From Podarcis cretensis (Eukaryota), in NCBI GenBank assembly GCA_951804945.1, contig OX638164.1:42842001-42906000 (forward strand): DNA of 64,000 nt, in the 5' to 3' direction. This document shows, piece by piece, positions 1 through 64,000 of this stretch. Position numbers and translations under genes: made by a program. Below the pieces are notes generated by a model. The model was not told the origin of the DNA. It searched no databases and was given only the letters and a program-made list of their open reading frames with translations. Position 1 is the stretch's first letter, and every line of letters begins with the position of its first letter.

Positions 1-1254
1 GAACAAGAGGAAAGAAGGGCTGGAACAAAAGAAGACGTGTTCTCCTACCTGCAGGTGAGCTTCATTGTAGTGACATGGAATAGGGCCTCTTCTGACAACT
101 CAGTCACCGCAACCTGAAAGAGTCTAGCACAAAGAGTTGCAGATGGAACACAATAGCAGGGAGCACAGCTATCTTACACCCTTGACCGAAGAACGGTACA
201 CTCCTCCAATCTGGGATGGCCATCCTCTTCCACCGAGTGCGCCACTTCGGGAGGGATGCACATGGAGCGGTGATGGATACAGCACAATCCACCCCCTTAA
301 CACATTTGTCAGTGAAATCATAGGCTATTATTTTAGAGTTATTACTACCACAGCCACGTTACCTATTGGTGATAGTTTTGCCTGCCCTGTTGTATAGTTA
401 CCTTTTGACGTCCGTTTCCCATTGATTTTGTAATCTTGTCATTGCTGCTGGAAAGACCAGTCATTTCAGTACAGCTCTACTCACTACAACGCTTCTCAAG
501 CATTCGTTCTCCTTCCACTGGAATCCTCCACTTGCAAGACACACTGGAGACATATTCCAGAGTTTAAGGCTCCATTTTAAGATGGGAATATACAGAAAGG
601 AGAGACCGGTACAAAAGCATTGCATTGAAAAAGGTCACTGAGTAGTCTTCATTCAAAGACTAATTAGTTTGTAAGGTAAATAAAACGTTAAGACTTTAAA
701 GTGTCTTAGTACAAGAACTGCAGGTGGAAAAGAGATTTTCTCTCCAGCCAAGCACGAGATACTCACCTAGAAGCCCTCCAGTCAGAATACATGAAACTGC
801 ATTGTTACTTTAATTGTGATGTAGCGTTTCAAGTTTACTTGATAGGTATTTGCACCTGTCACCACTTCTGACAAATCAAGAGTATTTAAAAGTTACCTTC
901 CTTCAACTGCAGTGCTAGTTACTGGCAAAGGAAGCTGACTGCTAGATCCGCTTTTTAAATTGGTATTTTAAATATATTACCTTCAGTGCTAGAGGATCCA
1001 AGTTTTTTGTATAGAGTCAACGCTTTGTGTTGTCTCAGCAATGAGCTAAATAGCTGTTCCTAAAAGATGCTTAGCGAAAATAAAATAAAATCCAAAATCC
1101 TTGGTTATTACCACTAGATAATCACATTACACATCAGGGGTAATTTTGCCTGGCCTGTTCCATAGTTACCATTTGAGCTCCATTTCCCGTATCTTTTTGT
1201 AATCTTGCAGGTTCTGCTGGAAAGGCTTAGTGCAGCTGATGTTCTCCTCTGCTT

Positions 1255-4463: not shown

Positions 4464-4480
4464 AATTATAGAATCATAAA

Positions 4481-5001
4481 AATCTTAAAAAGCAGAGAAT
4501 CTTAAAAAGCAGAATCTTAAAAAGCAGAGGCATCACCTTGCCAACAAAGGTCTGTATAGTTAAAGCTATAGTTTTCCCAGTAGTGATGTATGGAAGTGAG
4601 AGCTGGACCATAAAGAAGGCTGATCGCCGAAGAATAGATGCTTTTGAATTATGGTGCTGGAGGAGACTCTTGAGAGTCCCATGGACTGCAAGAAGATCCA
4701 TTCTTAAGGAAATCAGCCCTGAGTGCTCACTGGAAGGACAGATCCTGAAGCTGAGGCTCCAGTACTTTGGCCACCTCATGAGAAGAGAAGACTCCCTGGA
4801 AAAGACCCTGATGTTGGGAAAGATGGAGGGCACAAGGAGAAGGGGATGACAGAGGACGAGATGGTTGGACGGTGTTCTCGAAGCTACCAGCATGAGTTTG
4901 ACCAAACTGCAGGAGGCAGTGGAAGACAGGAGTGCCTGGCGTGCTCTGGTCCAGGGGGTCACGAAGAGTTGGACACGACTAAACGACTAAACAACAACAA
5001 C
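4481..5001 (+). mobile_element. BovB (RTE-clade LINE), 5'-truncated
   Basis: Encodes the RT C-terminal peptide 'IVKAIVFPVVMYGSESWTIKKADRRRIDAFELWCWRRLLRVPWTARRS' and ends in a (caa)n tail. Confidence 0.93.
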
Positions 5002-6459: not shown

Positions 6460-6652
6460 ATGGAGGCCCCCGAGGCGCGTCCGGGCGGCGCTGCCCGACC
6501 CAAGCAGCTGACCTCTTTCCTCATCCGAGACATCCTGCGCCCCGGCGGCGCTCCCGCCTCGGAGCCCGGCGGGGAGGCGCGTCCGCCGGCGCGGAGGGAT
6601 CGGCCCGGGGCCAGCCAAGCCCCCGAGAAGCCCGGCGCGGCGGACGCGACAG
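6460..6652 (+). CDS. NKX3-1: Homeobox protein Nkx-3.1, coding exon 1
   Basis: Contains the TN/eh1 motif 'LTSFLIRDIL'. Donor CAG|GTAAGG at 6653. Length 193 nt, phase 1, which joins exon 2 in frame. Confidence 0.9.
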
Positions 6653-7261
6653 GTAAGGGGAGGACCTTGCTCAGTTCCCCCCTCGGCGCTGGGAAGTTCT
6701 CGGAGCAGCCGCTTAGCCTGGCCCACCTGGCAGGGGGGTTGTGCGGGGGGGGGCATGGCAAGTTGGGCTGCTCCGCGCCCCGGGCAGGAGGGCAAGGGCT
6801 CGGCGAAAGGGGAGAAACCGGCAGCTGGCCCGCAGGGCTGCAGGACCTTCAGCTCGCGGATCGGGCAGCGGCTGCCTGGAAGCCTGTCTGTCCCCAAGTG
6901 GGGGAGCAATTGCCTGTTGGGGAATTGCTTTGTAAGTTTTGTAAACTCTTGTCCATATTTTACAAAGGAGGTCCCTGCAGGAGGAAAACCAGCACGGTTC
7001 CTGCAGTGTCTGCCCTGCTAGTTTTCCTCATGCAAGAAGCTTTATATATGGGGGCAATTAAAGAAATGTTTTCGTTGCCCCATTTGCAGTCTGAGATGGT
7101 GCGGTCTGTCCTGTCCCTTTGCTGCCTGAGTCTGCCATGTGAAAGGCAGAATAAGCTGAGACCAGCTCACAGTCCCTCAGGGTGAGCTTTGTGGTTGAGG
7201 GGGGATTTGATCTCTCCAACTAAGTCCAATGCTCTTAACCACAACACCCCACTGCCCCATT

Positions 7262-7560
7262 TGCACCTTACATCTAAAGCAGTATTTAAATAATCACAGA
7301 TTTCCCTAAAGAATCCTGGGAAATTGTAGTTTGTTAAGGGTGCTGAGAGGTGTTTGGGACCCCTTGTCCCACCACAGAGCTGAGCAACCACTCAGGGATT
7401 GATTGTTAACCCACTCTGGGATGGCACCTCTGCAGGGGAAGAGGGGTCTCTGAACAACTTTCAGCAGCCTTGATAAACTACAGTTCCCAGGATTCTTTGT
7501 GTGGGAGTGGAACCCATGATTGCTTAGTATGGTATATTGCCATTTTTACACACATGGTTC
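7262..7560. mobile_element. Palindromic MITE-like element in NKX3-1 intron
   Basis: Inverted arms 'aagaatcctgggaaattgtagtttgttaagg' and 'ccttgataaactacagttcccaggattctt'. Relatives at about 11355-11470, 34815-34985, 46570-46860 and 53155-53290. Confidence 0.65.
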
Positions 7561-7715
7561 AGAGGGGGCCTTATAAGCAAAATGCAAAGATCAAGAAAGT
7601 ACACAAAATGCCGTGTTGTCATACACACATCCCATGTGCAGTGTGATTGTGTGGTTTACAGTGCAGGATTTGCTGTGGAGATCAAGGTGGCCTAAACATG
7701 CCAATTGATTGTAGG

Positions 7716-7716
<1 letters not shown>

Positions 7717-7755
<39 letters not shown>
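7717..7755. repeat. (TG)n microsatellite followed by a CCTT-rich tract
   Basis: Directly visible. Confidence 0.95.
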
Positions 7756-7756
<1 letters not shown>

Positions 7757-7858
7757 TCCCTCCCTCCTTCCTTCCTTCCTTCCTTCCATCACCTCCCTCC
7801 CAAATTTTTGGTATTGTTTAAATAGGTCATAACTTTCCCCTTTCTGCTTCTCTACTAG

Positions 7859-8268
7859 ATCAGTCTGCAGAGGCCTTCCTCTCTCATTCTGAGAACACCC
7901 CCAAATCCTTACCGAGACTCCCAAAGCAGCAGAAGCGTTCCCGGGCTGCCTTCTCCCACATGCAGGTCATAGAGCTTGAGAAGAAGTTCAATCACCAGAA
8001 GTACCTGTCTGCACCTGAGCGAGCCCACCTAGCCAAGCACCTGAAACTCACAGAAACCCAAGTGAAAATCTGGTTCCAGAACAGAAGATATAAGACCAAG
8101 AGGAAGCAGCTGGCCTCAGAATTTGGTGGACTTGATAAGAACTCGGCAATTCCAGCCTTCAAAGAACGTGACTTCTGCAGGGCTACTCTGGCCCTTTCTG
8201 TGTACCACAGCTACCAGTATAATCCATATGTCTACTACCTGAATGGCTGGAGTCCAGTCTTGTGGTAA
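7859..8268 (+). CDS. NKX3-1: Homeobox protein Nkx-3.1, coding exon 2 (homeodomain and C-terminus)
   Basis: Polypyrimidine tract plus TAG acceptor. Homeodomain '[60 protein letters not shown]' carries the NK-class Tyr54. Tyr-rich tail ends 'WSPVLW'. Spliced CDS is 603 nt. Adjacent to SLC25A37 as in mammals. Confidence 0.96.
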
Positions 8269-29780: not shown

Positions 29781-30159
29781 GATCACCAAAGAATTGATGC
29801 TTTTGAATTCTGGTGCTGGAGGAGACTCTTGAGAGTCCCATGGACTGCAAGAAGATCCAACCTCTCCATTCTTAAGGAAATCAGCCCTGAGTGCTCACTG
29901 GAAGGACAGATCGTGAAGCTGAGGCTCCAATACTTTGGCCACCTCATGAGAAGAGAAGACTCCCTGGAAAAGACCCTGATGTTGGGAAAGATGGAGGGCA
30001 CAAGGAGAAGGGGACGACAGAGGACGAGATGGTGGGACAGTGTTCTTGAAGCTACAGACATGAGTTTGACCAAACTGCGGGAGGCAGTGGAAGACAGGTG
30101 TGCCTGGCGTGCTCTGGTCCAGGGGGTCACGAAGAGTCGGACACGACTAAACAACAAAA
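29781..30159 (+). mobile_element. BovB LINE, 5'-truncated
   Basis: Peptide 'RIDAFEFWCWRRLLRVPWTARRSNLSILKEISPECSLEG'. 11-bp TSD atttaaatact at 29770-29780 and 30160-30170. Confidence 0.95.
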
Positions 30160-38885: not shown

Positions 38886-39173
38886 CAGAGGACACCCAGG
38901 TTCAAATCCCACCCCATCCCCAGCCATGAAGCTCACCGAGTAATTTTGGGTCAGTCATTCACTGCGCCTGCTCTACCGCACAGGGATGTGGGGAAAAGAA
39001 AATGTAACACCGCCCTGGGATCCTTGGAGGTAGGTGGGATAAAATATAATTAACATATTGCAGAATTCTGCCCCAGACAACTTGAGTATAAGTTCCTAGT
39101 TACCATTTACCACCCCCCCCCCAAAAAAAAATCAAACACAAAATACATGCATATGGAAATCAGATCAAATACT

Positions 39174-39179
39174 TTTATT
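39174..39179 (-). terminator. Candidate distal poly(A) signal of SLC25A37
   Basis: On the minus strand, AATAAA is followed by 'tattttgtgtttgattttttttt' (GU/U-rich element) and preceded by AU-rich UTR-like sequence. It would imply a 3'UTR of about 6.5 kb. Confidence 0.5.
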
Positions 39180-39709
39180 TCTTAAGCTCCAGTGTTTTAA
39201 CTGTAGCAGCATTTCTCAGAAAAACAACTTTCTCCCCTGTTAAATATATACATATACATATATGTAGAAACATTCATTTAAAAAGTAGACATTGGTAAAT
39301 ACATAAAAAGGCAATTTTAGAAGAACAAAATATCAATTTTTAAAAATCCACCCTTGTTTTTTTAAAAATAAATGTGCGCTTATAGCATGCAAAGCAGCAA
39401 TGTGTGCACTTGTCTGCTTTGTTTCTTAAAGACCTTTCAAAAAACTTTAGCTGCTAGAATATTTTAATTTCTTAAGCCAAGACATGGCATAGCTGAAGAT
39501 GGCTTTAGAGCAGAGGCAGGGAGCGAGTCGCCCCCCCCCCCCGATGTCATCAGGCTCCCCATGCCCATCAGCCTCAGCCACCATGAGCAATGGTCAGGAA
39601 TGATGGCAGGTGTAGTCTGTAATCCCTGGGGGACACATTCCCTACTCTGCTTTAGAAGGGGAGCTCCAGTCCCAGCCACTGGTCATTCATGAGTATTCAG
39701 ATTTTTTTT

Positions 39710-39911
39710 CCTTCCAGTAGCACCTTAAAGACCAACTAGGTTAGTACTTGGTATGAGCTTTCGTGTGCATGCATACTTCTTCAGATACCATGCACACGAA
39801 AGCTCATACCAAGTACTAACCTAGTTGGTCTTTAAGGTGCTACTGGAAGGATTTTTTTTATTTTGTTTTGACTATGGGCAGACCAACACGGCTACCTATC
39901 TGTAACTGGAA
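39710..39911. mobile_element. Penelope-like element remnant with inverted terminal duplication
   Basis: Perfect 63-bp inverted repeat and the PLE-type end 'gttggtctttaaggtgctactgga...caacacggctacc'. Flanked by the direct repeat cagatttttttt (39698-39709 and 39912-39923). Confidence 0.8.
39750..39789 (-). ncRNA. Minimal type I hammerhead ribozyme motif
   Basis: Minus strand reads GGUAU-CUGAAGA-AGUAUGCAUGCACAC-GAAA-GC-UC-AUACC: stem I, both catalytic core boxes, stem II and a vestigial stem III. Confidence 0.7.
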
Positions 39912-42900
39912 CAGATTTTTTTTGTTTTTTTAAAAATGAAGACTGCACTCAGAGACCATCCCACTGGTGACTGTCAGAATCTTCCCCAGATGCTTCACAG
40001 ATTAGCTTCTGAGAAGCCAGCCTAGTTCATGGTGAAATCCTAACCTCTGATCTAGATTGCAAGGAAATCAAATCAAATAGGCATCAAGGGAGACCAGTCT
40101 TTAAATGTAAGCCTGTCCCCAATTGTGTGCACAGTGGTTGGTGAGGTTTAAAGCAGAAAACATGATGGCGGGGCTCCTGAACCCTGCCCTCCCCATTCTA
40201 CCCAACACACACACCTTCTTATAGAATTACAATCTGGCTAGGGAAAATGACCTCAGGAGCCACTGCTGGTGTGCACACGTAGGGCTGGAACATAGCCAGA
40301 AGGAGGGTCCAGCAAGCCCCCACCCCCATGCCTCTTTTGTATTTTGAATCATATTCCTAACAGAATAAAAAATACTAGCCAGCAGAGTTTTGGGCTGGGT
40401 CAGTTATATTTGGTTGATTTTAGACTGTTACTGTCCTTAAGGTCACAGGCATGTATTAACGGCAGCAGCATAAGGGACACAGCTACAGATCTCCCTCCCG
40501 CAGCAACGTCTGTCTTCTCGTGCATGCATTCTGCAACATTAGCAAGCAGAGATGCGGCTGTAAACTGGATCCCTGATTGGCTAGCTTGTGCTGCTTCATT
40601 TTCAGTCACACCATTAGTCAATGCGTGAGCTGATTCCAAACTGCTTTTCCCAGAGGCCTATTTTCCAACTCAACTGGGAGACTGCTTCACACTTTCTTGT
40701 GATAGAGGGTTTTGTGCATAAAATGTTTTAAAATGTGCAGTGATTAAGCAGGCATATGGCATAACCAACATGCTACAGACCCTTGCAGCATGTTCCTGTA
40801 GTGGAAGACCTGTGGTTATCCACCAGTCGCTTGGGCAAAAGCAACTCTGATCTACGAATAGAAAGTTGGGTCCAGTTCAAAAAAGCTATGTCTCTAGTTC
40901 TGTGCACAGTTCATCCAAGGCAAGCCCTGTCCAAACATACACATCCAACAAACTTCTGAAAGGAGGGGTTTTCAAAAGCAGCTTGTAATAAGGCATTGAG
41001 CAGGGCGGGTGAGCGTGCATCCATACTACTCAAAGGTGGAAACAATTGGCCATGAATACTTGCCCTAGTTCTGAGCATTCTGCTGAACCCATGTCTGGGC
41101 TGTAGCACTTCAGAATGTAAGAGGGAGGTTTACATTATATATCAAGTGTGGCGGAACCTCCAGATGTTGTTGCACTAAAACTCCCATCACTCCCATCTAG
41201 AATGGGCACTGGTAGAGTTAACAGGAGCGGGAGTCCAATATCTGGAGGGCCACAGGTTTCCCACCCGTGTCCGTACAAAAATTCTATTGGCAAAGAAATC
41301 TAGACTGTACAGTAACCTAGCCTAGTCTTCTGTCTGACAGTGTAGGAATCAATTTTAAATTTCAGTCCTCAAGACCAAGGTTATTGCTAAACTCTCCTCT
41401 GGTTTGTATGACACTCGGGAATGTCTTTTACCTCTACATTCCAAAGGCTGAAAATGCTACATACACACCGTTAATGAAAAATAATCCTATTGGTTTTGCA
41501 ACCTAATGTCCAGTTGATGTTTTCAGTTGAACAAACAGGCAACTAGCCATGATGCACACACATTCGTCTTCCAGCAGTAGCTGCTATAATAATTCTGTTT
41601 TCCCCAGTCAAGTAATGCACTAACCCTGCTTCTAGCCAACGTGCCTCTAGCTCTCATACATCTCCAAAAAGGCAACAGCAAAGATTATTCCCCAACAGTA
41701 GAAAGTTACTCAAGGGCCAAGTTACTAAATGTATGCTGGGACTGCTGTCTGCATTTCTATCCAAGTGACCAGTCCCTGTATTCAGAAGGGCAATGAAAAC
41801 CAGCATGCAAGTACATTGCAGAAGAACATTTGACTGAAGGTATTGAGTGGTACCTTTAAAAAAATCCTTCAGCTTCCTGGAAATCATTCAGTGAGAAGTA
41901 TTATCAGAATGGTTTTAAAACTTAGTGCAAGCTTGACAACAAATTCAATATTTACTCGGGGTAGAAGCATTGTAGTTAATGGACATGTTTAGCTTAGGTT
42001 CATTAATTTCAGTGGGTCTACTCTGGGTAGGATACAGTGGAATACCACCCAAAACCTCCTTCTGCTCCAAACATATATGCTAAGAAAGCCGAGAAGCAAG
42101 AGACACACGATTTTGAAAATGCTTAAGTAGTGATTCAAGAGGTGTTTTACAAATTCAACTGTGCACCTCTACAATCAATATTTGACCACCAGGAACAGAA
42201 TCCTCTTTTTGCCAGGGAATACAAACACACACACACGGAAGAGAGAAACCCACCTAAATAAAAAAAAATGCCACAGCAGGGTGAGGGGAGATCAAAATTT
42301 TTCTGATATAACCATCAAATGGCAGGATGCCATTTTCAGACTGGTTATCCCTCCACAGGAAGACCTTAGGACACCTTCAGAATGCAGGTGATCATCCCTG
42401 TCAAGTAAAGGGCAATTCCAGATGCAGTACTTTGGCCAGTGACCACGTCAAGTTCTAGGGCAGACCTCCGTGTTGCGCCCAACCCTGAAGACAACACTTG
42501 TGTCAGTTGCTCCCCGACTGCCAATCCCAGTAGGAACACTTCCCCCAAGTGGTGAGATCAGGCGCCTGGGCTGTGTGGACATACAATCACAACATGGTAA
42601 AGGTGACCCTACTGACCATGTCAGGATGAGGTGGGGAGATGGAGGGAAAATTTACATGGGGTGCTCTTTCAAGAATCAGCCCCATATCACGCACACCCTG
42701 CAGTTCTGCCACAAATATATTATAAACAGTGCTTTTTTGTGACAGTACTGACCAGTATGGAGTACCATCACCTTTTCCCCCTGCCCATGGCAGCCATTTT
42801 GTACTGAAACTCATGGTTCTTTTTAAAGATATGAGTACCGGCACCTTTTGGGTCTTTTCTGCACTCTTCCCCCTGCAAAAAAGCACTGATTAGAAAGATT

Positions 42901-43384
42901 TGGGATGGCGGCAAAAGGTAGCAGCCAATATGCAAATGAGCAGCAGCAGCAGCTCTAAGCCCACCATAACCCACCAAAGAAAGAAAAGGAACCTCTGAGG
43001 TATTTTTGTTTCACTTCTCGCTGCTGAGGAAGCAGACGACTGGAATAATCTGAAGCAGTTATGTATTAGTATTTATAATTAAAGTGATCAGGTTGAGCTT
43101 TGGCACTTTCAAGCACAAAAGCAACCATCTACAACCCATAGACTTGGAGCAGCCTTCATCCACATGGCGCCCACCAGGTCTATGGAACTACCATTCCCAT
43201 CAGGCTGATCTGCAGCCAGTCCACCAAGTGCATTAAGATTACTATGAAATAGCTGCTATTTATAAATAACTATTATTTATAAAGTGTATAGACCCAGGCA
43301 CTTTGCAAGGGGCAGCCCGTTACAATTATTTCTTATATATTGTTCAGTTAAATCCCAACAGGATTTCTTCTTCTTTTCTAAGTA

Positions 43385-43892
43385 CCGTATTGACCCAAAT
43401 ATAAGCCGCACTTGCAAATAAGCCACACCTTTAAAATTCAAAGGGGGGGGGGAGAAAATACCCAATTATAAGCCGCTCCCTTAAAATTGTGCAGGCACTC
43501 ACACCCGTAATTGGCAAATGTAGAAGAAAATCCTACGGGTATCATTCCCCCACACTCCGTGGATGCTTCCTGGGGGGGGGGAGAGCTGTGCTGCTTTGCC
43601 AGCGGCCTCCCCCCCCCCTTCCCCCTGACGGCTTGGGGAGGCTTGGGAGCCCCAGTCGGGATGCGTACCATTGTCCCACACCCCCGACAGCCCTCGTGGT
43701 GGCATCGGGGGGGGGGCTCTCTCCATTCCGGCCCTGGAAGGCAAGGCAGGGCCACAGACCTAGCACAGCTGTTCCAGCAGCGATGTCGTAAAAGCCAACT
43801 TCTGTAAGGTTGCAAATTTAAGCCGTACTTTAACTTTTCATGATTGGAATTGGGGGGGGGGGGAAGTGTGGCTTATATTCGGGCCAATACGG
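43385..43892. mobile_element. Tc1/mariner (pogo-like) MITE in putative SLC25A37 3'UTR
   Basis: TIRs ccgtattgacccaaatataagcc / ggcttatattcgggccaatacgg. TA on the left, CA on the right. Confidence 0.8.
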
Positions 43893-44004
43893 CATCTTGC
43901 TTTAGAATTGTACATTTTCCACATACAGGGATGTGTAGCACACAACAAACAGGACCATCCAGTTGCAATCCTGATTTGCTAACTATATATATAAAATAAA
44001 AATA

Positions 44005-44245
44005 CAGTGATACCTCCAGTTACAAACGCCTCAGGTTACAAATGCTTCATGTTATGAACTCCGCTCACCTGGAAGAGTTACCTCGAGTTGAGAACTTTTC
44101 CCCAGGATGAGAACGGAAATTGTGTGCCAGCAGCGCAGCGGCAGCAAGAGACCCCATTTGCGAAAGCACGCCTCTAGTTAAGAACAGTTTCAGGTCAAGA
44201 ACGGACCTCCGGAACGAATTAAGTTCATAACTAGAGGTACCACTG
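44005..44245. mobile_element. Tigger-like MITE in putative SLC25A37 3'UTR
   Basis: TA TSDs, TIRs cagtgatacctccagtta / taactagaggtaccactg. Confidence 0.85.
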
Positions 44246-45666
44246 TAAACTGTACTCTTTGTATGGACAAAACGTTTCTGGGACAGCACAAAAGTTGTAC
44301 ATGTTCATAAAAAAGCAGACACAAAGCTATCACAAGTGCTAGAACTAACTCTACATACCTTCATTTGTACAGGCCAGAGGGCCAAGAGCAACATCACCAC
44401 TCTCTCTTTTGGGGGGGGGGGGGGAGTGAAGTTTGTCTCTGCCTCTGCAAAGGCTTTTTGGTTCAGAGGCATTATAACTGTACCGCAACAAAGAGCTGCC
44501 TTTTCATGTCAGTTTTTTTTGCCTTTTACTTTTTTTAAAAAAACAACAACTAAGAAGTGATTCGAGGCAAGTTTTCCTAAGGAAATGTAAACTGATGCCC
44601 CACCCCTCAGCACACTTGCAGGAGTGAAATTTGCAAGCACACACACACACACACACACACAACTGCAAAAGGTTTTGGACATTTGTGCACGTCAGGCACA
44701 GGGGTCTTAGTGGGGAAAAGTCACACAACACCTGTTCAGAAACTGAGATGCAATTTGGTTTTAAAGTACCATCAGAGGCATTTAAGGGTTTGCTAAAACA
44801 CGGTTTTATGCAAAACTACGTACTCTTGGTCTTCTACTCGGTATTGGTCAAAACTGGTTTCCAGAAGTGCCTACCAATCCCAATACATTAAAAGGGAAAT
44901 GACTCACATAAGGCAGTTTCTTAAGATTTCAAAGTCCTACACCTCTTTGAGTATCCAGTTTCAGGAGAATTTAAGGAGCTGTTTAAGGATTGAGAATTCT
45001 TTACAACTATGACACTGGACAAGAAGTGATGATTAAAGCCATTCTGGTTTAAGAGGGGTGGGGATAATGCTATTCACAATTTTTCAAAATAGTGCAGAAG
45101 CCTCTTCTGACACACACACACAAAGAACTCTTGTTCAGCTGTTAAAACTCTTAAAAGCCACCCAACTCACTGATATAGAAAAATAAAAGGATAAACATTA
45201 TCCATCAATTTATATCGCATAATTTCTCTATATAGAACTTTGTTCAGCTAAAAGGCTCAATCTTTTACATTTTCAAAGAGGGGAAAGTCCAATCCACAAG
45301 AACTCTCTTTGCCCCTTGCCCCTCAGGGGCGGCCCTCAAAAGGACTTCAAGGCAGAAACAAGTAGGCCTTGTAGAACCCTGTACAAACTGGTCACAGTTA
45401 TAAACTCCAAAGAAAACTATAAATACTTGTTCAAGCCAAACAATCCTTGCACAATATGGTTTAACAAAAGCAGGGGGGAAGGTACAGAATCAATTTCTCT
45501 AGCATCTAAGAAAACACACACACACACACACACAGCAGACCCCAGGGGTGAATCTACCAGAAACCTTTACACAGTCACATAAAGAGCCCTGGAGAATTCC
45601 AGCACCCCCACAAAGGGACTCTGCCGTCTCAGAGGTTCTGGGTTGCAGCTGCAGCACCAGGACATG

Positions 45667-46187
45667 TCAGCACGGCGTCCCTTTCTCCAATTCACGCTTT
45701 GTAAGTGCATATTTGAAGAATTCATACACAGACCAGGAAATGGCAGTTGAAGGCATCTGGTATATCACCCTTGCCTGGACCCCCTTAAAATACCCAGCGA
45801 TGCCCCCCAGCTGGTACACTGTCCTAAAGGCATTGGCCATTCCGGAGAGATGTCCGCTAACGTTCACAGAACTCAACACCATGTTCTCTTGTGTGTTGAG
45901 GAGAGTCTTGCAGACGTCCAGGGGAGTCGTGGCGGCGGCCGCCACAGCCCCAGCCACAGCCCCCGATATGATGTGCGTGCTCGGATTGTACTGCCGGCAG
46001 GGGTTGATCTGCTCCTGCATGAACTCATAGGTCATGAAGTGAATGGCTTGGAAGGGGATGTTCATGGTGAGCTGGGTGCTGTAGCTCCGGTAGAAAGCGC
46101 CCATCCCCTCCGTCCGATGCACCGCCCGGATGCACTCCAGGACCGTCTTGTACGGAGAGTTGTACATCTGCATGCGCTGCTTCACCA
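45667..46187 (-). CDS. SLC25A37: Mitoferrin-1, last coding exon (exon 4)
   Basis: '[13 protein letters not shown]...[15 protein letters not shown]...[27 protein letters not shown]' with the mitochondrial carrier signature. AG acceptor at 46189-46188, 521 nt to TGA, phase-consistent with exon 3. Confidence 0.96.
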
Positions 46188-62716: not shown

Positions 62717-62984
62717 GCATAGCAGTGCAAGTGGAGCCCAGGAAGGGAAAGAGAGATGGGGGTAAGCAAATGGACAGTTGTCAGAGTGGAGGGGAGAACA
62801 TGGACCAAACTCAGGGCTTCACAACCAAGGATTCCCCTCTATAACCTCAGATGCCATCTTTTTTTAAAAAGGCTCCAGGAAAGCTAAACATTTGAAGGAG
62901 CAATCTACCTGCCTTCACACAAGTAAAAGAGAAGAAGCATCCTTTGAGCAAGGTCACAACTTAGTGGCAGAGTATGAGGTTCCA

Positions 62985-63486
62985 GCAGCCTGCTTCTTGG
63001 GAGAAAAACAATGACAAACCTAGACAGCATCTTAAAAAGCAGAGACATCACCTTGCCAACAAAGGTCCGTATAGTTAAAGCCATGGTTTTCCCAGTAGTG
63101 ATGTATGGAAGTGAGAGCTGGACCATAAAGAAGGCTGATCGCTGAAGAATTGATGCTTTTGAATTATGGTGCTGGAGGAGACTCTTGAGAGTCCCATGGA
63201 CTGCAAGAAGATCAAACCTCTCCATTCTGAGGGAAATCAGCCCTGAGTGCTCACTGGAAGGACAGATCGTGAAGCTGAGGCTCCAGTACTTTGGCCACCT
63301 CATGAGAAGAGACGACTCCCTGGAAAAGACCCTGATGTTGGGAAAGATGGAGGGCACAAGGAGAAGGGGGCGACAGAGGACGAGATGGTTGGATAGTGTT
63401 CTCGAAGCTACCAGCATGAGTTTGACTAAACTGCGGGAGGCAGTGGAAAACAGGAGTGCCTGGCATGCAGGCACTAAACAACAACA
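62985..63486 (+). mobile_element. BovB LINE, 5'-truncated, nested in a Squam2-like SINE
   Basis: BovB RT C-terminal sequence, with an 11-bp TSD atgaggttcca at 62974-62984 and 63487-63497. Confidence 0.95.
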
Positions 63487-64000
63487 ATGAGGTTCCAAGC
63501 TCAATCTGTGGCATCTCCAGAGAGGGCTGGCAAAGACTCCCTGCCCAAAGTCCTGCAGAGCTGCTGCCAGTCAGTGTAGACAATACTGAGCTAGGTGGAC
63601 CAATGGTCTGACTCAGTATAAGGCAGCTTCCTCTGCCCCCAAGGCCACACATTCATGTAAATAAGATTCAATGCGAAGAGCAGCAGACCACAACCACCAC
63701 CGCAAAATGATTAAGACTCATCGGGAAAAGGCAGAGCTTCTCAGAAGCTTGGAAGGAATCCTCCCCAGAATGACTGCTCTGCAGAAGGAGGAAACACAAG
63801 CCAAAGGAAAGTCTCTCTTTGGCAAGTGCAGCCAAAGTTTACCTTGGCAAAGCACAGATCTAGTATTCCTTCACTTTCCATTTGCTAGCAAGCAGCCATG
63901 GCAATTGCACACACTCCGTGTTCCGAGAGGCCTGCCATTAAAGGTTGGTCAACGCGTCCACACTCCGAGCGCTCCAAATGCTCAGTCATCTTTCCCAGCA

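What the first reader, a model, noticed from the sequence alone, without database searches (positions are those of the whole stretch)
39750..39789. Hammerhead ribozyme motif in sense orientation within the putative long 3'UTR of mitoferrin-1
Seen: on the SLC25A37 strand, GGUAU CUGAAGA AGUAUGCAUGCACAC GAAA GC UC^AUACC. Stem I is GGUAU/AUACC, the CUGANGA and GAAA boxes are intact, stem II has one mismatch, and predicted cleavage follows CUC. It lies about 570 nt upstream of the candidate distal AATAAA at 39174-39179. Known: Penelope-like elements carry minimal type I hammerheads that cleave poorly as monomers and better as dimers, and 3'UTR hammerheads can lower expression (rodent Clec2). Inference: a young insertion that could cut the poly(A) tail off the long isoform of an iron importer.
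Basis: partly seen in the sequence, partly recalled or inferred. Interest (0 to 1): 0.8.

Follow-up and report, generated by a model that had tools for sequence, protein, structure and literature searches.

The report
Penelope retroelement hairpin with hammerhead relic
The hammerhead-ribozyme motif is real, but it belongs to a young 202-bp Penelope-type jumping-gene insertion downstream of a lizard mitoferrin-1 gene. There it is locked inside a perfect 63-bp hairpin with no partner copy, so it is an ordinary mobile-element relic and very unlikely to cut the mRNA.

Summary
The 40-nt motif lies on the minus strand at 39789->39750, with intact CUGAAGA and GAAA boxes, a 5-bp stem I, one A.C mismatch in stem II, and a cut predicted after CUC.

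It is not a host feature. It lies in a 202-bp insertion (39710-39911) with a perfect 12-bp target duplication. Two related lizards lack the insertion at the same site, and the repeat family is extremely abundant.

The insertion has the Penelope-like layout: a 5'-truncated direct copy joined head-to-head to an inverted copy. This gives a perfect 63-bp hairpin. The only complete hammerhead runs from the last base of the first-transcribed arm, through the loop, into the other arm.

Cleavage is unlikely:
- The ribozyme fold costs +42.5 kcal/mol against the hairpin.
- Helix III is absent, so a dimer would be needed.
- The 64-kb window holds no partner motif.
- No Rfam hammerhead model matches.
- Published Penelope hammerheads cleave poorly.

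The gene is mitoferrin-1, on the same strand. The site is 5.9 kb past the stop codon. A long 3'UTR is plausible but unproven.

The scan has already noted such Penelope hairpins elsewhere in this genome. Verdict: a new member of a known kind, of low interest.

The parts
39750..39789 (-). Minimal type I hammerhead motif. Stem I is GGUAU/AUACC. The core is CUGAAGA followed by a bulged A. Stem II is GUAUG/CACAC with an A.C mismatch at 39774. Then come GAAA and the AGCU palindrome. The predicted cut follows C at 39755.
   Evidence: No Rfam hammerhead hit.
39709..39771 (.). Left arm of the perfect 63-bp inverted repeat. On the minus strand it is the inverted element copy that carries the 3' half of the hammerhead.
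   Evidence: repeat I1, 100% complementary; hairpin fold -124.1 kcal/mol, z = -24.
39772..39788 (-). 17-nt hairpin loop. It holds the CUGAAGA box and the 5' strand of stem II, and is the only unduplicated part of the inverted copy.
39789..39851 (.). Right arm of the inverted repeat. On the plus strand it is the start of the 5'-truncated direct element copy. That copy begins inside stem II and has no CUGANGA box.
39710..39911 (+). The whole 202-bp Penelope-type insertion. The inverted 5' copy runs 39788->39710 on the minus strand. The direct copy runs 39789-39911 on the plus strand.
   Evidence: Organism F contig X19 record 1 joins 39701 to 39917. Organism B contig X5 record 24 joins about 39697 to 39912. 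X2 record 8 runs from the flank into 39728. The family pile-up reaches 2.25 million, against about 90 in the flanks.
39698..39709 (.). Target-site duplication, left copy: CAGATTTTTTTT.
   Evidence: D3, 12/12 identical.
39912..39923 (.). Target-site duplication, right copy: CAGATTTTTTTT.
   Evidence: D3.
39852..39911 (+). 60-nt 3' extension present only in the direct copy. It includes the AC-rich CAGACCAACACGGCTACC at 39879-39896. It resembles the one-sided 'tail' and internal reverse-transcription start region of Penelope-like elements.
   Evidence: X21 record 16 shows the canonical contiguous order. PMC11167929 and PMC8557442 describe the tail.
39857..39862 (-). AATAAA on the SLC25A37 strand, brought in by the insertion. 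It lies 5 nt upstream of the hairpin.
39174..39179 (-). Candidate distal poly(A) signal AATAAA, 6,488 nt after the stop codon. An ATTAAA lies at 39463-39468.
45667..46146 (-). Last coding exon of SLC25A37 (mitoferrin-1), with its stop codon at 45669->45667.
   Evidence: ORF. (99% identity to Podarcis muralis mitoferrin-1, E = 7.7e-104). (Mito_carr).

Best explanation
A lineage-specific 202-bp insertion of a very abundant Penelope-like retroelement terminus landed in a T-run 5.9 kb downstream of the mitoferrin-1 stop codon.

It was laid down in the usual Penelope manner. A 5'-truncated direct copy (plus strand, 39789-39911) is joined head-to-head to an inverted 5'-truncated copy (minus strand, 39788->39710). 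Both were copied from one template, which gives a perfect 63-bp inverted repeat flanked by a 12-bp target duplication.

The hammerhead motif is the element's own minimal ribozyme, with no helix III and therefore dimer-type. It survives complete only in the inverted copy, which happens to be in SLC25A37 sense.

In any minus-strand transcript the antisense arm is made first and pairs perfectly with the ribozyme's 3' half. Together with the stem II mismatch and the lack of a partner motif, this means the ribozyme is not expected to cleave.

- **Shown:** sequence, hairpin, target duplication, empty sites, family abundance, energetics, gene identity.
- **Inferred:** the Penelope mechanism, lack of cleavage, and transcription through the site.
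For: - **Motif and hairpin:**
- **Target duplication:** CAGATTTTTTTT at both ends.
- **Empty orthologous site in two relatives:** X19 record 1 joins 39701 to 39917. X5 record 24 (depth 14.2) has 104 unplaced letters. They match a depth-14.2 piece that starts at 39594, so the contig joins 39697 to 39912, a skip of 214 = 202 + 12.
- **Insertion present in a second sample of the same species:** X2 record 8.
- **Abundance:** contig pile-up on 39700-39899 is 2.25 million in X2 and 0.86 million in X5, against about 90 and about 20 in unique bins.
- **Canonical order:** a family contig (X21 record 16) carries hammerhead...CTGGAAGG and then ...CAGACCAACACGGCTACC in direct order.
- **One template for both arms:** this copy differs from most family contigs at 39739 and 39746, yet the arms remain perfectly complementary.
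- **Literature on insertion structure:** Penelope insertions are 5'-truncated, often carry an adjacent inverted 5'-truncated copy and a one-sided tail, and favour microsatellite targets (PMC8557442). The Anolis element PAc cuts at ATT and extends both DNA strands (PMC11167929).
- **Match to the published min-hammerhead:** short helix I, bulged base after position 9, G10.1-C11.1, palindromic 15.2-16.2 (PMC4209133).
- **Energetics:** ddG +42.5 kcal/mol; stem I pair probability about 1e-29. The hammerhead fold of the isolated 40-mer is -3.1 kcal/mol, against -9.3 for the G variant.
- **No partner motif:**
Against: - No cleavage assay or end-mapping was possible, so inactivity is an inference.
- Helicases, co-transcriptional kinetics, a Penelope protein (PAc's hammerhead cleaved only when the protein was present, PMC11167929) or pairing in trans with abundant family transcripts could in principle allow some cleavage.
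- No RT/GIY-YIG ORF is in the window, and I obtained no family consensus. Assignment to Penelope-like elements therefore rests on structure and motif, not on homology to a curated element. The PAc supplement gave no sequence match.
- Short-read contigs cannot span 63-nt arms, so the inverted junction was not confirmed independently of the assembly.
Confidence: 0.85

Rival explanations
1. First reader's reading. The motif is an active self-cleaving ribozyme in the long SLC25A37 3'UTR. It removes the poly(A) tail of the long isoform and lowers mitoferrin-1 expression.
For: - All core nucleotides are intact and in gene sense.
- There is no canonical poly(A) signal between the stop codon and the insertion, so a long UTR is plausible.
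- Probable RNA contigs of a relative span the site.
- A 3'UTR hammerhead precedent exists in Clec2 (PMC6155905).
Against: - The hairpin outcompetes the ribozyme fold by 42.5 kcal/mol.
- Stem II carries a mismatch.
- There is no helix III and no second motif for a dimer.
- Single min-hammerheads showed no detectable cleavage, and dimers cleaved poorly (PMC4209133).
- No RNA-seq ends were seen at the Anolis Penelope hammerhead site (PMC11167929).
- No Rfam hammerhead model matches.
- The insertion is absent from relatives, so there is no conservation.
Confidence: 0.05
2. If the insertion matters to the mRNA at all, it acts through its other features. One is the perfect 63-bp dsRNA hairpin, a possible substrate for ADAR editing, Dicer, Staufen or dsRNA sensors. 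The other is the AATAAA it brings 5 nt upstream of the hairpin, which could create a shorter 3' end.
For: - Hairpin fold of -124 kcal/mol, z = -24.
- Generic long-hairpin microRNA-precursor models match it at E = 1e-12 to 1e-17, but all far below their gathering scores.
- AATAAA at 39862->39857 on the gene strand.
Against: - There is no RNA evidence from the species that carries the insertion.
- No editing or small-RNA data could be examined.
- The family has a huge copy number, so most such hairpins must be neutral.
- The AATAAA sits in an A-rich run, and its use is unproven.
Confidence: 0.12
3. The motif is a chance match, or the palindrome is an assembly artefact.
For: - Short-read contigs cannot resolve 63-nt inverted arms.
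- Penelope structures are known to trouble assemblies (PMC8557442).
Against: - The descriptor gives 0 hits in 200 shuffles.
- The 214-nt skip in two relatives equals the insertion plus one target duplication exactly.
- An independent sample's contig enters the left arm.
- Canonical family contigs carry the same motif.
Confidence: 0.02

Closest known systems
Minimal hammerheads of metazoan Penelope-like elements (Cervera and De la Pena 2014, PMC4209133; dimer cleavage reviewed in PMC6765202)
   Same: - Type I topology.
- Helix I of 4-5 bp.
- Unpaired base between positions 9 and 10.1.
- G10.1-C11.1 pair.
- No helix III, with palindromic 15.2-16.2 (AGCU).
- Located in a retroelement terminus.
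- Massive dispersed copy number.
- Described in reptiles.
   Different: - Helix II here is short (5 bp) and carries an A.C mismatch.
- This copy is single, with no tandem or nearby partner.
- Its 3' half is duplicated in antisense right beside it.
Poseidon element PAc of Anolis carolinensis (PMC11167929)
   Same: - Same order of parts: hammerhead, an AUG at the start of stem II, then an AC-rich region about 100 nt further on where insertions end.
- The target contains ATT.
- Both DNA strands are cut and extended, which explains head-to-head copies.
- One-sided tail.
   Different: - Different sequence family; the paper's supplement gave no match.
- Here the frame from the AUG closes after 12 codons, and no RT/EN ORF is present.
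- The cut site is 20 nt from the AUG, not 26.
Discontinuous hammerhead in the 3'UTR of rodent and platypus Clec2 genes (PMC6155905)
   Same: A hammerhead motif in sense orientation downstream of a stop codon, proposed to affect the mRNA 3' end.
   Different: - The Clec2 motif is type III, with a very long helix I.
- It is conserved across species.
- It is described as self-cleaving.
- This one is a minimal type I motif, lineage-specific, unconserved and structurally blocked.
Non-LTR retrozymes of animals (PMC7229834; bioRxiv 10.64898/2026.07.22.740005)
   Same: Non-coding repeats that carry a hammerhead and are related to Penelope pLTRs.
   Different: Retrozymes are tandem arrays with a hammerhead in every unit, and they give circular RNAs. 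Here there is one complete motif in an inverted pair, not a tandem array.
Twin-priming 5' inversions of LINE-1 (from my own knowledge, not checked here)
   Same: The 5' part of the insert is inverted relative to the 3' part, within a single target duplication. The junction shows 1 nt of microhomology.
   Different: - There is a 63-nt duplicated overlap.
- There is no poly(A) tail.
- The element is of Penelope type, not a LINE.

Membership tests
Penelope-type minimal hammerhead (min-HHR) | Conserved core: CUGANGA, GAAA and a UH cleavage triplet, in type I order | tested here: met
   CUGAAGA ... GAAA ... UC.
Penelope-type minimal hammerhead (min-HHR) | Short open helix I (4-5 bp) | tested here: met
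   GGUAU/AUACC. The outer G-C pair is created by the inversion junction. One canonical family contig has U at that place (loose end of X21 at 39788).
Penelope-type minimal hammerhead (min-HHR) | Unpaired base between positions 9 and 10.1, and a G10.1-C11.1 pair | tested here: met
   CUGAAGA-A-G...C-GAAA.
Penelope-type minimal hammerhead (min-HHR) | Stable helix II (6-8 bp in the described families) | tested here: inconclusive
   Helix II has only 5 positions, one of them an A.C mismatch at 39774. The hammerhead fold is -3.1 kcal/mol and is not the minimum-energy fold of the 40-mer. The G variant gives -9.3.
Penelope-type minimal hammerhead (min-HHR) | No helix III; palindromic 15.2-16.2 that allows a dimer | tested here: met
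   A-GC-U follows GAA.
Penelope-type minimal hammerhead (min-HHR) | A second copy nearby to form the active dimer | tested here: not met
   CTGANGA...GAAAGCT matches once in 64 kb. The descriptor also matches once. The direct copy lacks the CUGANGA box.
Penelope-type minimal hammerhead (min-HHR) | Self-cleavage | not testable with these tools
   All runs laid were contigs, which cannot show RNA ends (table 6: none).
Rfam hammerhead families (Hammerhead_1, _3, _II, HH9, HH10) | A match to the covariance model | tested here: not met
   No hammerhead hit at gathering score over 64 kb. None at E <= 10 in 551 nt or in 61 nt.
Penelope-like element insertion | Target-site duplication, with a microsatellite or ATT target | tested here: met
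   Perfect 12-bp CAGATTTTTTTT. Empty sites in two relatives.
Penelope-like element insertion | 5'-truncated copy with an adjacent inverted 5'-truncated copy | tested here: met
   Direct copy 39789-39911 and inverted copy 39788->39710. The feature is described in PMC8557442.
Penelope-like element insertion | 30-40-bp tail at one end only | tested here: inconclusive
   One end carries a 60-nt extension (39852-39911) that the inverted copy lacks. Without a family consensus I cannot say which part is the 'tail'.
Penelope-like element insertion | RT plus GIY-YIG ORF, or homology to a curated Penelope element | tested here: not met
   The insert is 202 bp with no ORF. The window holds no other copy. 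The PAc supplement gave no match. No repeat library was available.
Regulatory 3'UTR hammerhead (Clec2 type) | Conserved among species, and located within a demonstrated 3'UTR | tested here: not met
   Absent from organisms B and F. UTR status is unproven.
Non-LTR retrozyme | Tandem head-to-tail units, each with a hammerhead | tested here: not met
   No tandem copy is present, only an inverted pair with one complete motif.

The most novel reading that the evidence does not exclude
In the living lizard the hairpin might be opened, by helicases or by a Penelope protein (as with PAc, whose hammerhead cleaved only when its protein was present). Alternatively the motif might pair in trans with abundant family transcripts. 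Either way the ribozyme would cut the long mitoferrin-1 isoform. That would be a species-specific, transposon-delivered switch on an erythroid iron importer.
Probability: 0.04. Interest if true: 0.6.

Novelty: new member of a known kind. Interest (0 to 1): 0.15.

Why it matters
This result removes a false lead. An intact-looking hammerhead in a gene's 3' region is, in this lizard genome, the routine signature of Penelope-type insertions and not a host regulatory ribozyme.

The locus is still a clean, datable example of a head-to-head Penelope insertion, with a perfect target duplication, perfect arms and empty sites in two relatives. That makes it useful for studying how these elements integrate.

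If the region is transcribed, it is also a natural test of what a new 63-bp dsRNA hairpin and a new AATAAA do to a long 3'UTR.

Tried and rejected
- **Rfam** at gathering score and at E <= 10 on 64 kb, 551 nt and 61 nt: no hammerhead family. Only generic long-hairpin microRNA-precursor models matched, far below their cut-offs. I rejected these as hairpin look-alikes.
- **Other copies in the window:** searched by pattern and by blastn; none found. No covariation test was therefore possible.
- **Exact-pattern scans** for the motif in metagenome and viral contigs: 0 hits.
- **A second metagenome scan** with the AC-rich 18-mer: 19 loci, none carrying the neighbouring element sequence. These are chance matches.
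- **The PAc paper's supplement:** searched for this family's sequence; no match.
- **Lunse et al. 2016** (PMC5785218) is not held, so I cite it only through the review PMC6765202.
- **The search of earlier findings by sequence:** blank.
- **Contig ends near 39.19 kb as evidence of a poly(A) site:** considered and rejected, because DNA contigs end there too, at a low-complexity run.
- **The gap in X19 at 44300-45099 as evidence against a continuous UTR:** considered and rejected. The tool drops human-like contigs without notice, and a high-copy repeat breaks contigs at 44.1-44.3 kb.
- **Spliced model:** Only single exons were searched, by reference.

Full report
**1. The observation**

The minus strand from 39789 to 39750 reads GGTATCTGAAGAAGTATGCATGCACACGAAAGCTCATACC. 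This parses as a type I hammerhead.
- Helix I is GGUAU/AUACC.
- The core is CUGAAGA, followed by one unpaired A.
- Helix II is GUAUG-CAUG-CACAC, with an A.C mismatch (the A is at 39774).
- GAAA follows, and then the palindromic A-GC-U.
- C17 is at 39755, so the predicted cut lies between 39755 and 39754.

My own descriptor requires the core boxes, at least 4 contiguous pairs in helix I, G10.1-C11.1, at least 4 pairs in helix II, and palindromic 15.2/16.2. It finds only this site on both strands of the window, and none in 200 dinucleotide shuffles. The window holds no N.

**2. What surrounds it**

The motif is not free-standing. A perfect 63-bp inverted repeat has arms at 39709-39771 and 39789-39851, with a 17-nt loop between them. 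The CUGAAGA box and the 5' strand of helix II lie in the loop. The rest of the ribozyme lies in one arm.

A perfect 12-bp direct repeat, CAGATTTTTTTT, sits at 39698-39709 and again at 39912-39923 (D3). It brackets 202 bp, 39710-39911.

Public contigs laid on 39100-45099 show that this block is an insertion.
- In relative 'organism F', one 3,464-nt contig (X19 record 1) runs 39190-39701 and continues directly at 39917.
- In relative 'organism B', contig X5 record 24 (depth 14.2) has 104 letters before 39912. A depth-14.2 piece starts at 39594, by the from_end values at 39632 and 39640. The contig therefore joins 39697 to 39912, a skip of exactly 214 = 202 + 12.
- In a second sample of the window's own species, X2 record 8 runs from the unique flank into the element as far as 39728.

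From table 8, the laid pieces of B differ from the window by about 1.5% (71 of 4,760 letters). Those of F differ by about 4.1% (185 of 4,469). The insertion is thus younger than a split of about 1.5% divergence. This fits zero differences across 63 arm pairs and 12 duplication pairs, which puts pairwise divergence under 4% at the 95% level.

**3. What the insertion is**

*Abundance.* Summed contig depth over 39700-39899 is 2.25 million in X2 and 0.86 million in X5. Unique bins show roughly 90 and 20. The tool warns that this is not a copy number, but it does show a very high-copy family.

*Canonical order.* A family contig (X21 record 16) gives the direct order: hammerhead, then ...CTGGAAGG, then TTATTTTG...CAGACCAACACGGCTACC.... 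Read against that order, the locus consists of two copies.
- A direct copy on the plus strand, 39789-39911. It is 5'-truncated inside helix II and has no CUGANGA box.
- An inverted copy on the minus strand, 39788->39710. It is the only copy that keeps the whole hammerhead.

*One template.* This copy differs from most family contigs at 39739 and 39746, yet the arms are perfectly complementary. Both arms were therefore copied from one template.

*Match to published Penelope-like elements.*
- Insertions show strong 5' truncation, an adjacent inverted 5'-truncated copy, an extension at one end only, and a bias toward microsatellite targets (PMC8557442).
- A hammerhead is found in the terminal repeat (PMC4209133).
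- The purified Anolis element PAc cuts at ATT and extends both DNA strands. It starts reverse transcription in an AC-rich stem-loop about 111-118 nt into the ORF, and its ORF begins at hammerhead stem II (PMC11167929).
- Here an AUG (39774->39772) opens stem II, and the cut site is 20 nt from it. The AC-rich block is nt 94-111 from the AUG, and the insert ends at nt 126. The target contains ATT.

These are parallels, not identity.
- The PAc supplement gave no sequence match.
- The frame from this AUG closes after 12 codons.
- No RT/EN ORF or second copy is in the window.

I therefore file it as a Penelope-type insertion on structure and motif, without homology to a curated element.

**4. Is it a hammerhead family member?**

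It meets the features that Cervera and De la Pena give for metazoan Penelope min-hammerheads (PMC4209133):
- a short helix I;
- an extra base after position 9;
- the G10.1-C11.1 pair;
- no helix III, with palindromic 15.2-16.2.

It fails every Rfam hammerhead model, both at gathering score and at E <= 10, even when only 61 nt are searched. This is expected for motifs that lack helix III and the loop contacts.

Helix II is weak. The hammerhead fold of the isolated 40-mer is -3.1 kcal/mol and is not its minimum-energy fold (-4.8). With G in place of A at 39774, it is -9.3 and close to the minimum-energy fold (-10.1). At least one other family contig carries that G (CTGAAGAAGTGTGCAT, table 5c).

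**5. Can it cut?**

In the native minus-strand transcript the hairpin fold is -138.0 kcal/mol. The best fold that contains helices I and II is -95.5, a penalty of 42.5 kcal/mol. The helix I pair probabilities are about 1e-29.

The antisense arm is transcribed first, so it is already waiting when the ribozyme's 3' half emerges.

A motif without helix III needs a second copy to build that helix, and the 64-kb window has none.

Published data point the same way.
- Single min-hammerheads showed no detectable cleavage, and dimers or trimers cleaved poorly (PMC4209133, PMC6765202).
- PAc's hammerhead cleaved only with its protein present, and no RNA-seq reads began or ended at its site (PMC11167929).

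I conclude that cleavage of an SLC25A37 transcript is very unlikely. This is an inference, not a measurement.

**6. Is it in the mitoferrin-1 3'UTR?**

*Gene identity and strand.* The last coding exon (45667-46146, minus strand) is 99% identical to Podarcis muralis mitoferrin-1 (E = 7.7e-104) and carries Mito_carr. The genome is therefore a lacertid lizard, and the gene and strand are as claimed. A convergent NK-type homeobox gene at 6.4-8.3 kb fits the synteny I recall from human.

*Position.* The motif starts 5,878 nt after the stop codon.

*Poly(A) signals.* On the minus strand there is no AATAAA or ATTAAA between the stop codon and the insertion. The first canonical signals are:
- the one brought by the element itself, at 39862->39857;
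- ATTAAA at 39468->39463;
- AATAAA at 39179->39174.

*RNA evidence.* No run is on record as RNA. X19 is only guessed to be RNA. I think it probably is, for three reasons.
- It holds 148 million letters of contigs, with this region at depth about 100.
- Its repeat-to-unique depth ratio is about 280, against 25,000-48,000 in the DNA runs.
- Six small runs of that species, from three studies, hold the same share of the stretch.

If X19 is RNA, the relative transcribes 39190-44032 across the empty site. Contigs give neither strand nor ends.

X19 has a gap at 44300-45099. The tool itself says such dips prove nothing. They can arise from dropped human-like contigs, or from a high-copy repeat at 44.1-44.3 kb.

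A long 3'UTR is therefore plausible but unproven. There is no usable RNA evidence from the species that carries the insertion. X21 gives only one exact 223-nt contig at 41739-41961, at depth 3.

**7. Most likely effect**

Most probably there is none. This is one neutral, recent copy among a very large family. If the region is transcribed, the features more likely to matter are the 63-bp perfect dsRNA and the new AATAAA 5 nt upstream of it, not the ribozyme.

**8. Novelty and earlier notes**

Penelope hammerheads, their inverted insertion structures and their abundance in reptiles are all published. Earlier notes of this scan describe the same kind of Penelope hairpin with a hammerhead core at other places in this genome. 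One of them records this hairpin as excluding the ribozyme fold. I formed the Penelope reading before seeing those notes, and I tested it at this locus. The locus is a new member of a known kind, and its interest is low.

**9. Limits**

- All runs laid were contigs.
- No repeat library or family consensus was available.

Noticed in passing
window 39857-39862 (-): The inserted element brings an AATAAA on the SLC25A37 strand, 5 nt upstream of the hairpin. It is the first canonical poly(A) hexamer after the stop codon, 5.8 kb away. A GU-rich stretch (GAGCTTTCGTGTG) lies about 50 nt downstream.
   Followed up: partly
window 111-296 (-): Match to 7SK RNA (RF00100, 64.3 bits against a gathering score of 35), with two large internal deletions. 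It is probably a 7SK-derived retrocopy or pseudogene.
   Followed up: no
window 6460-8268 (+): An NK-type homeobox gene. One exon has a TSFLIRDIL-like motif (ORF 6460-7185). A homeodomain exon lies at 7960-8268 (Pfam PF00046, E = 3.3e-19). The gene is convergent with SLC25A37, as I recall for NKX3-1 in human.
   Followed up: partly
window 4474-4962, 29783-30157, 62905-63504 (-): Three similar antisense ORFs (...LQHHNSKASIL.RSAFFMVQLSLPYITTGKT...). From memory they look like BovB-type LINE 3' ends. This would be consistent with a squamate genome.
   Followed up: no
window 44100-44299, also 43900-44099, 41100-41299, 41900-42099, 43300-43499: Other very high-copy repeats lie inside the putative 3'UTR, judged by contig pile-up (up to 4.35 million at 44100-44299 in X2). 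Many contigs break at 44177 and 44247.
   Followed up: no
window 39540-39613 and about 41157-41240: Joints 39606/39613 -> 41240 in two species, with raised depth at 39500-39699, suggest two copies of another dispersed repeat. One of them lies just beside the Penelope insertion.
   Followed up: no
window 39709-39851: At the DNA level this is a perfect 63-bp palindrome with a 17-bp spacer. From general knowledge, such palindromes are prone to deletion and hard to assemble from short reads.
   Followed up: no
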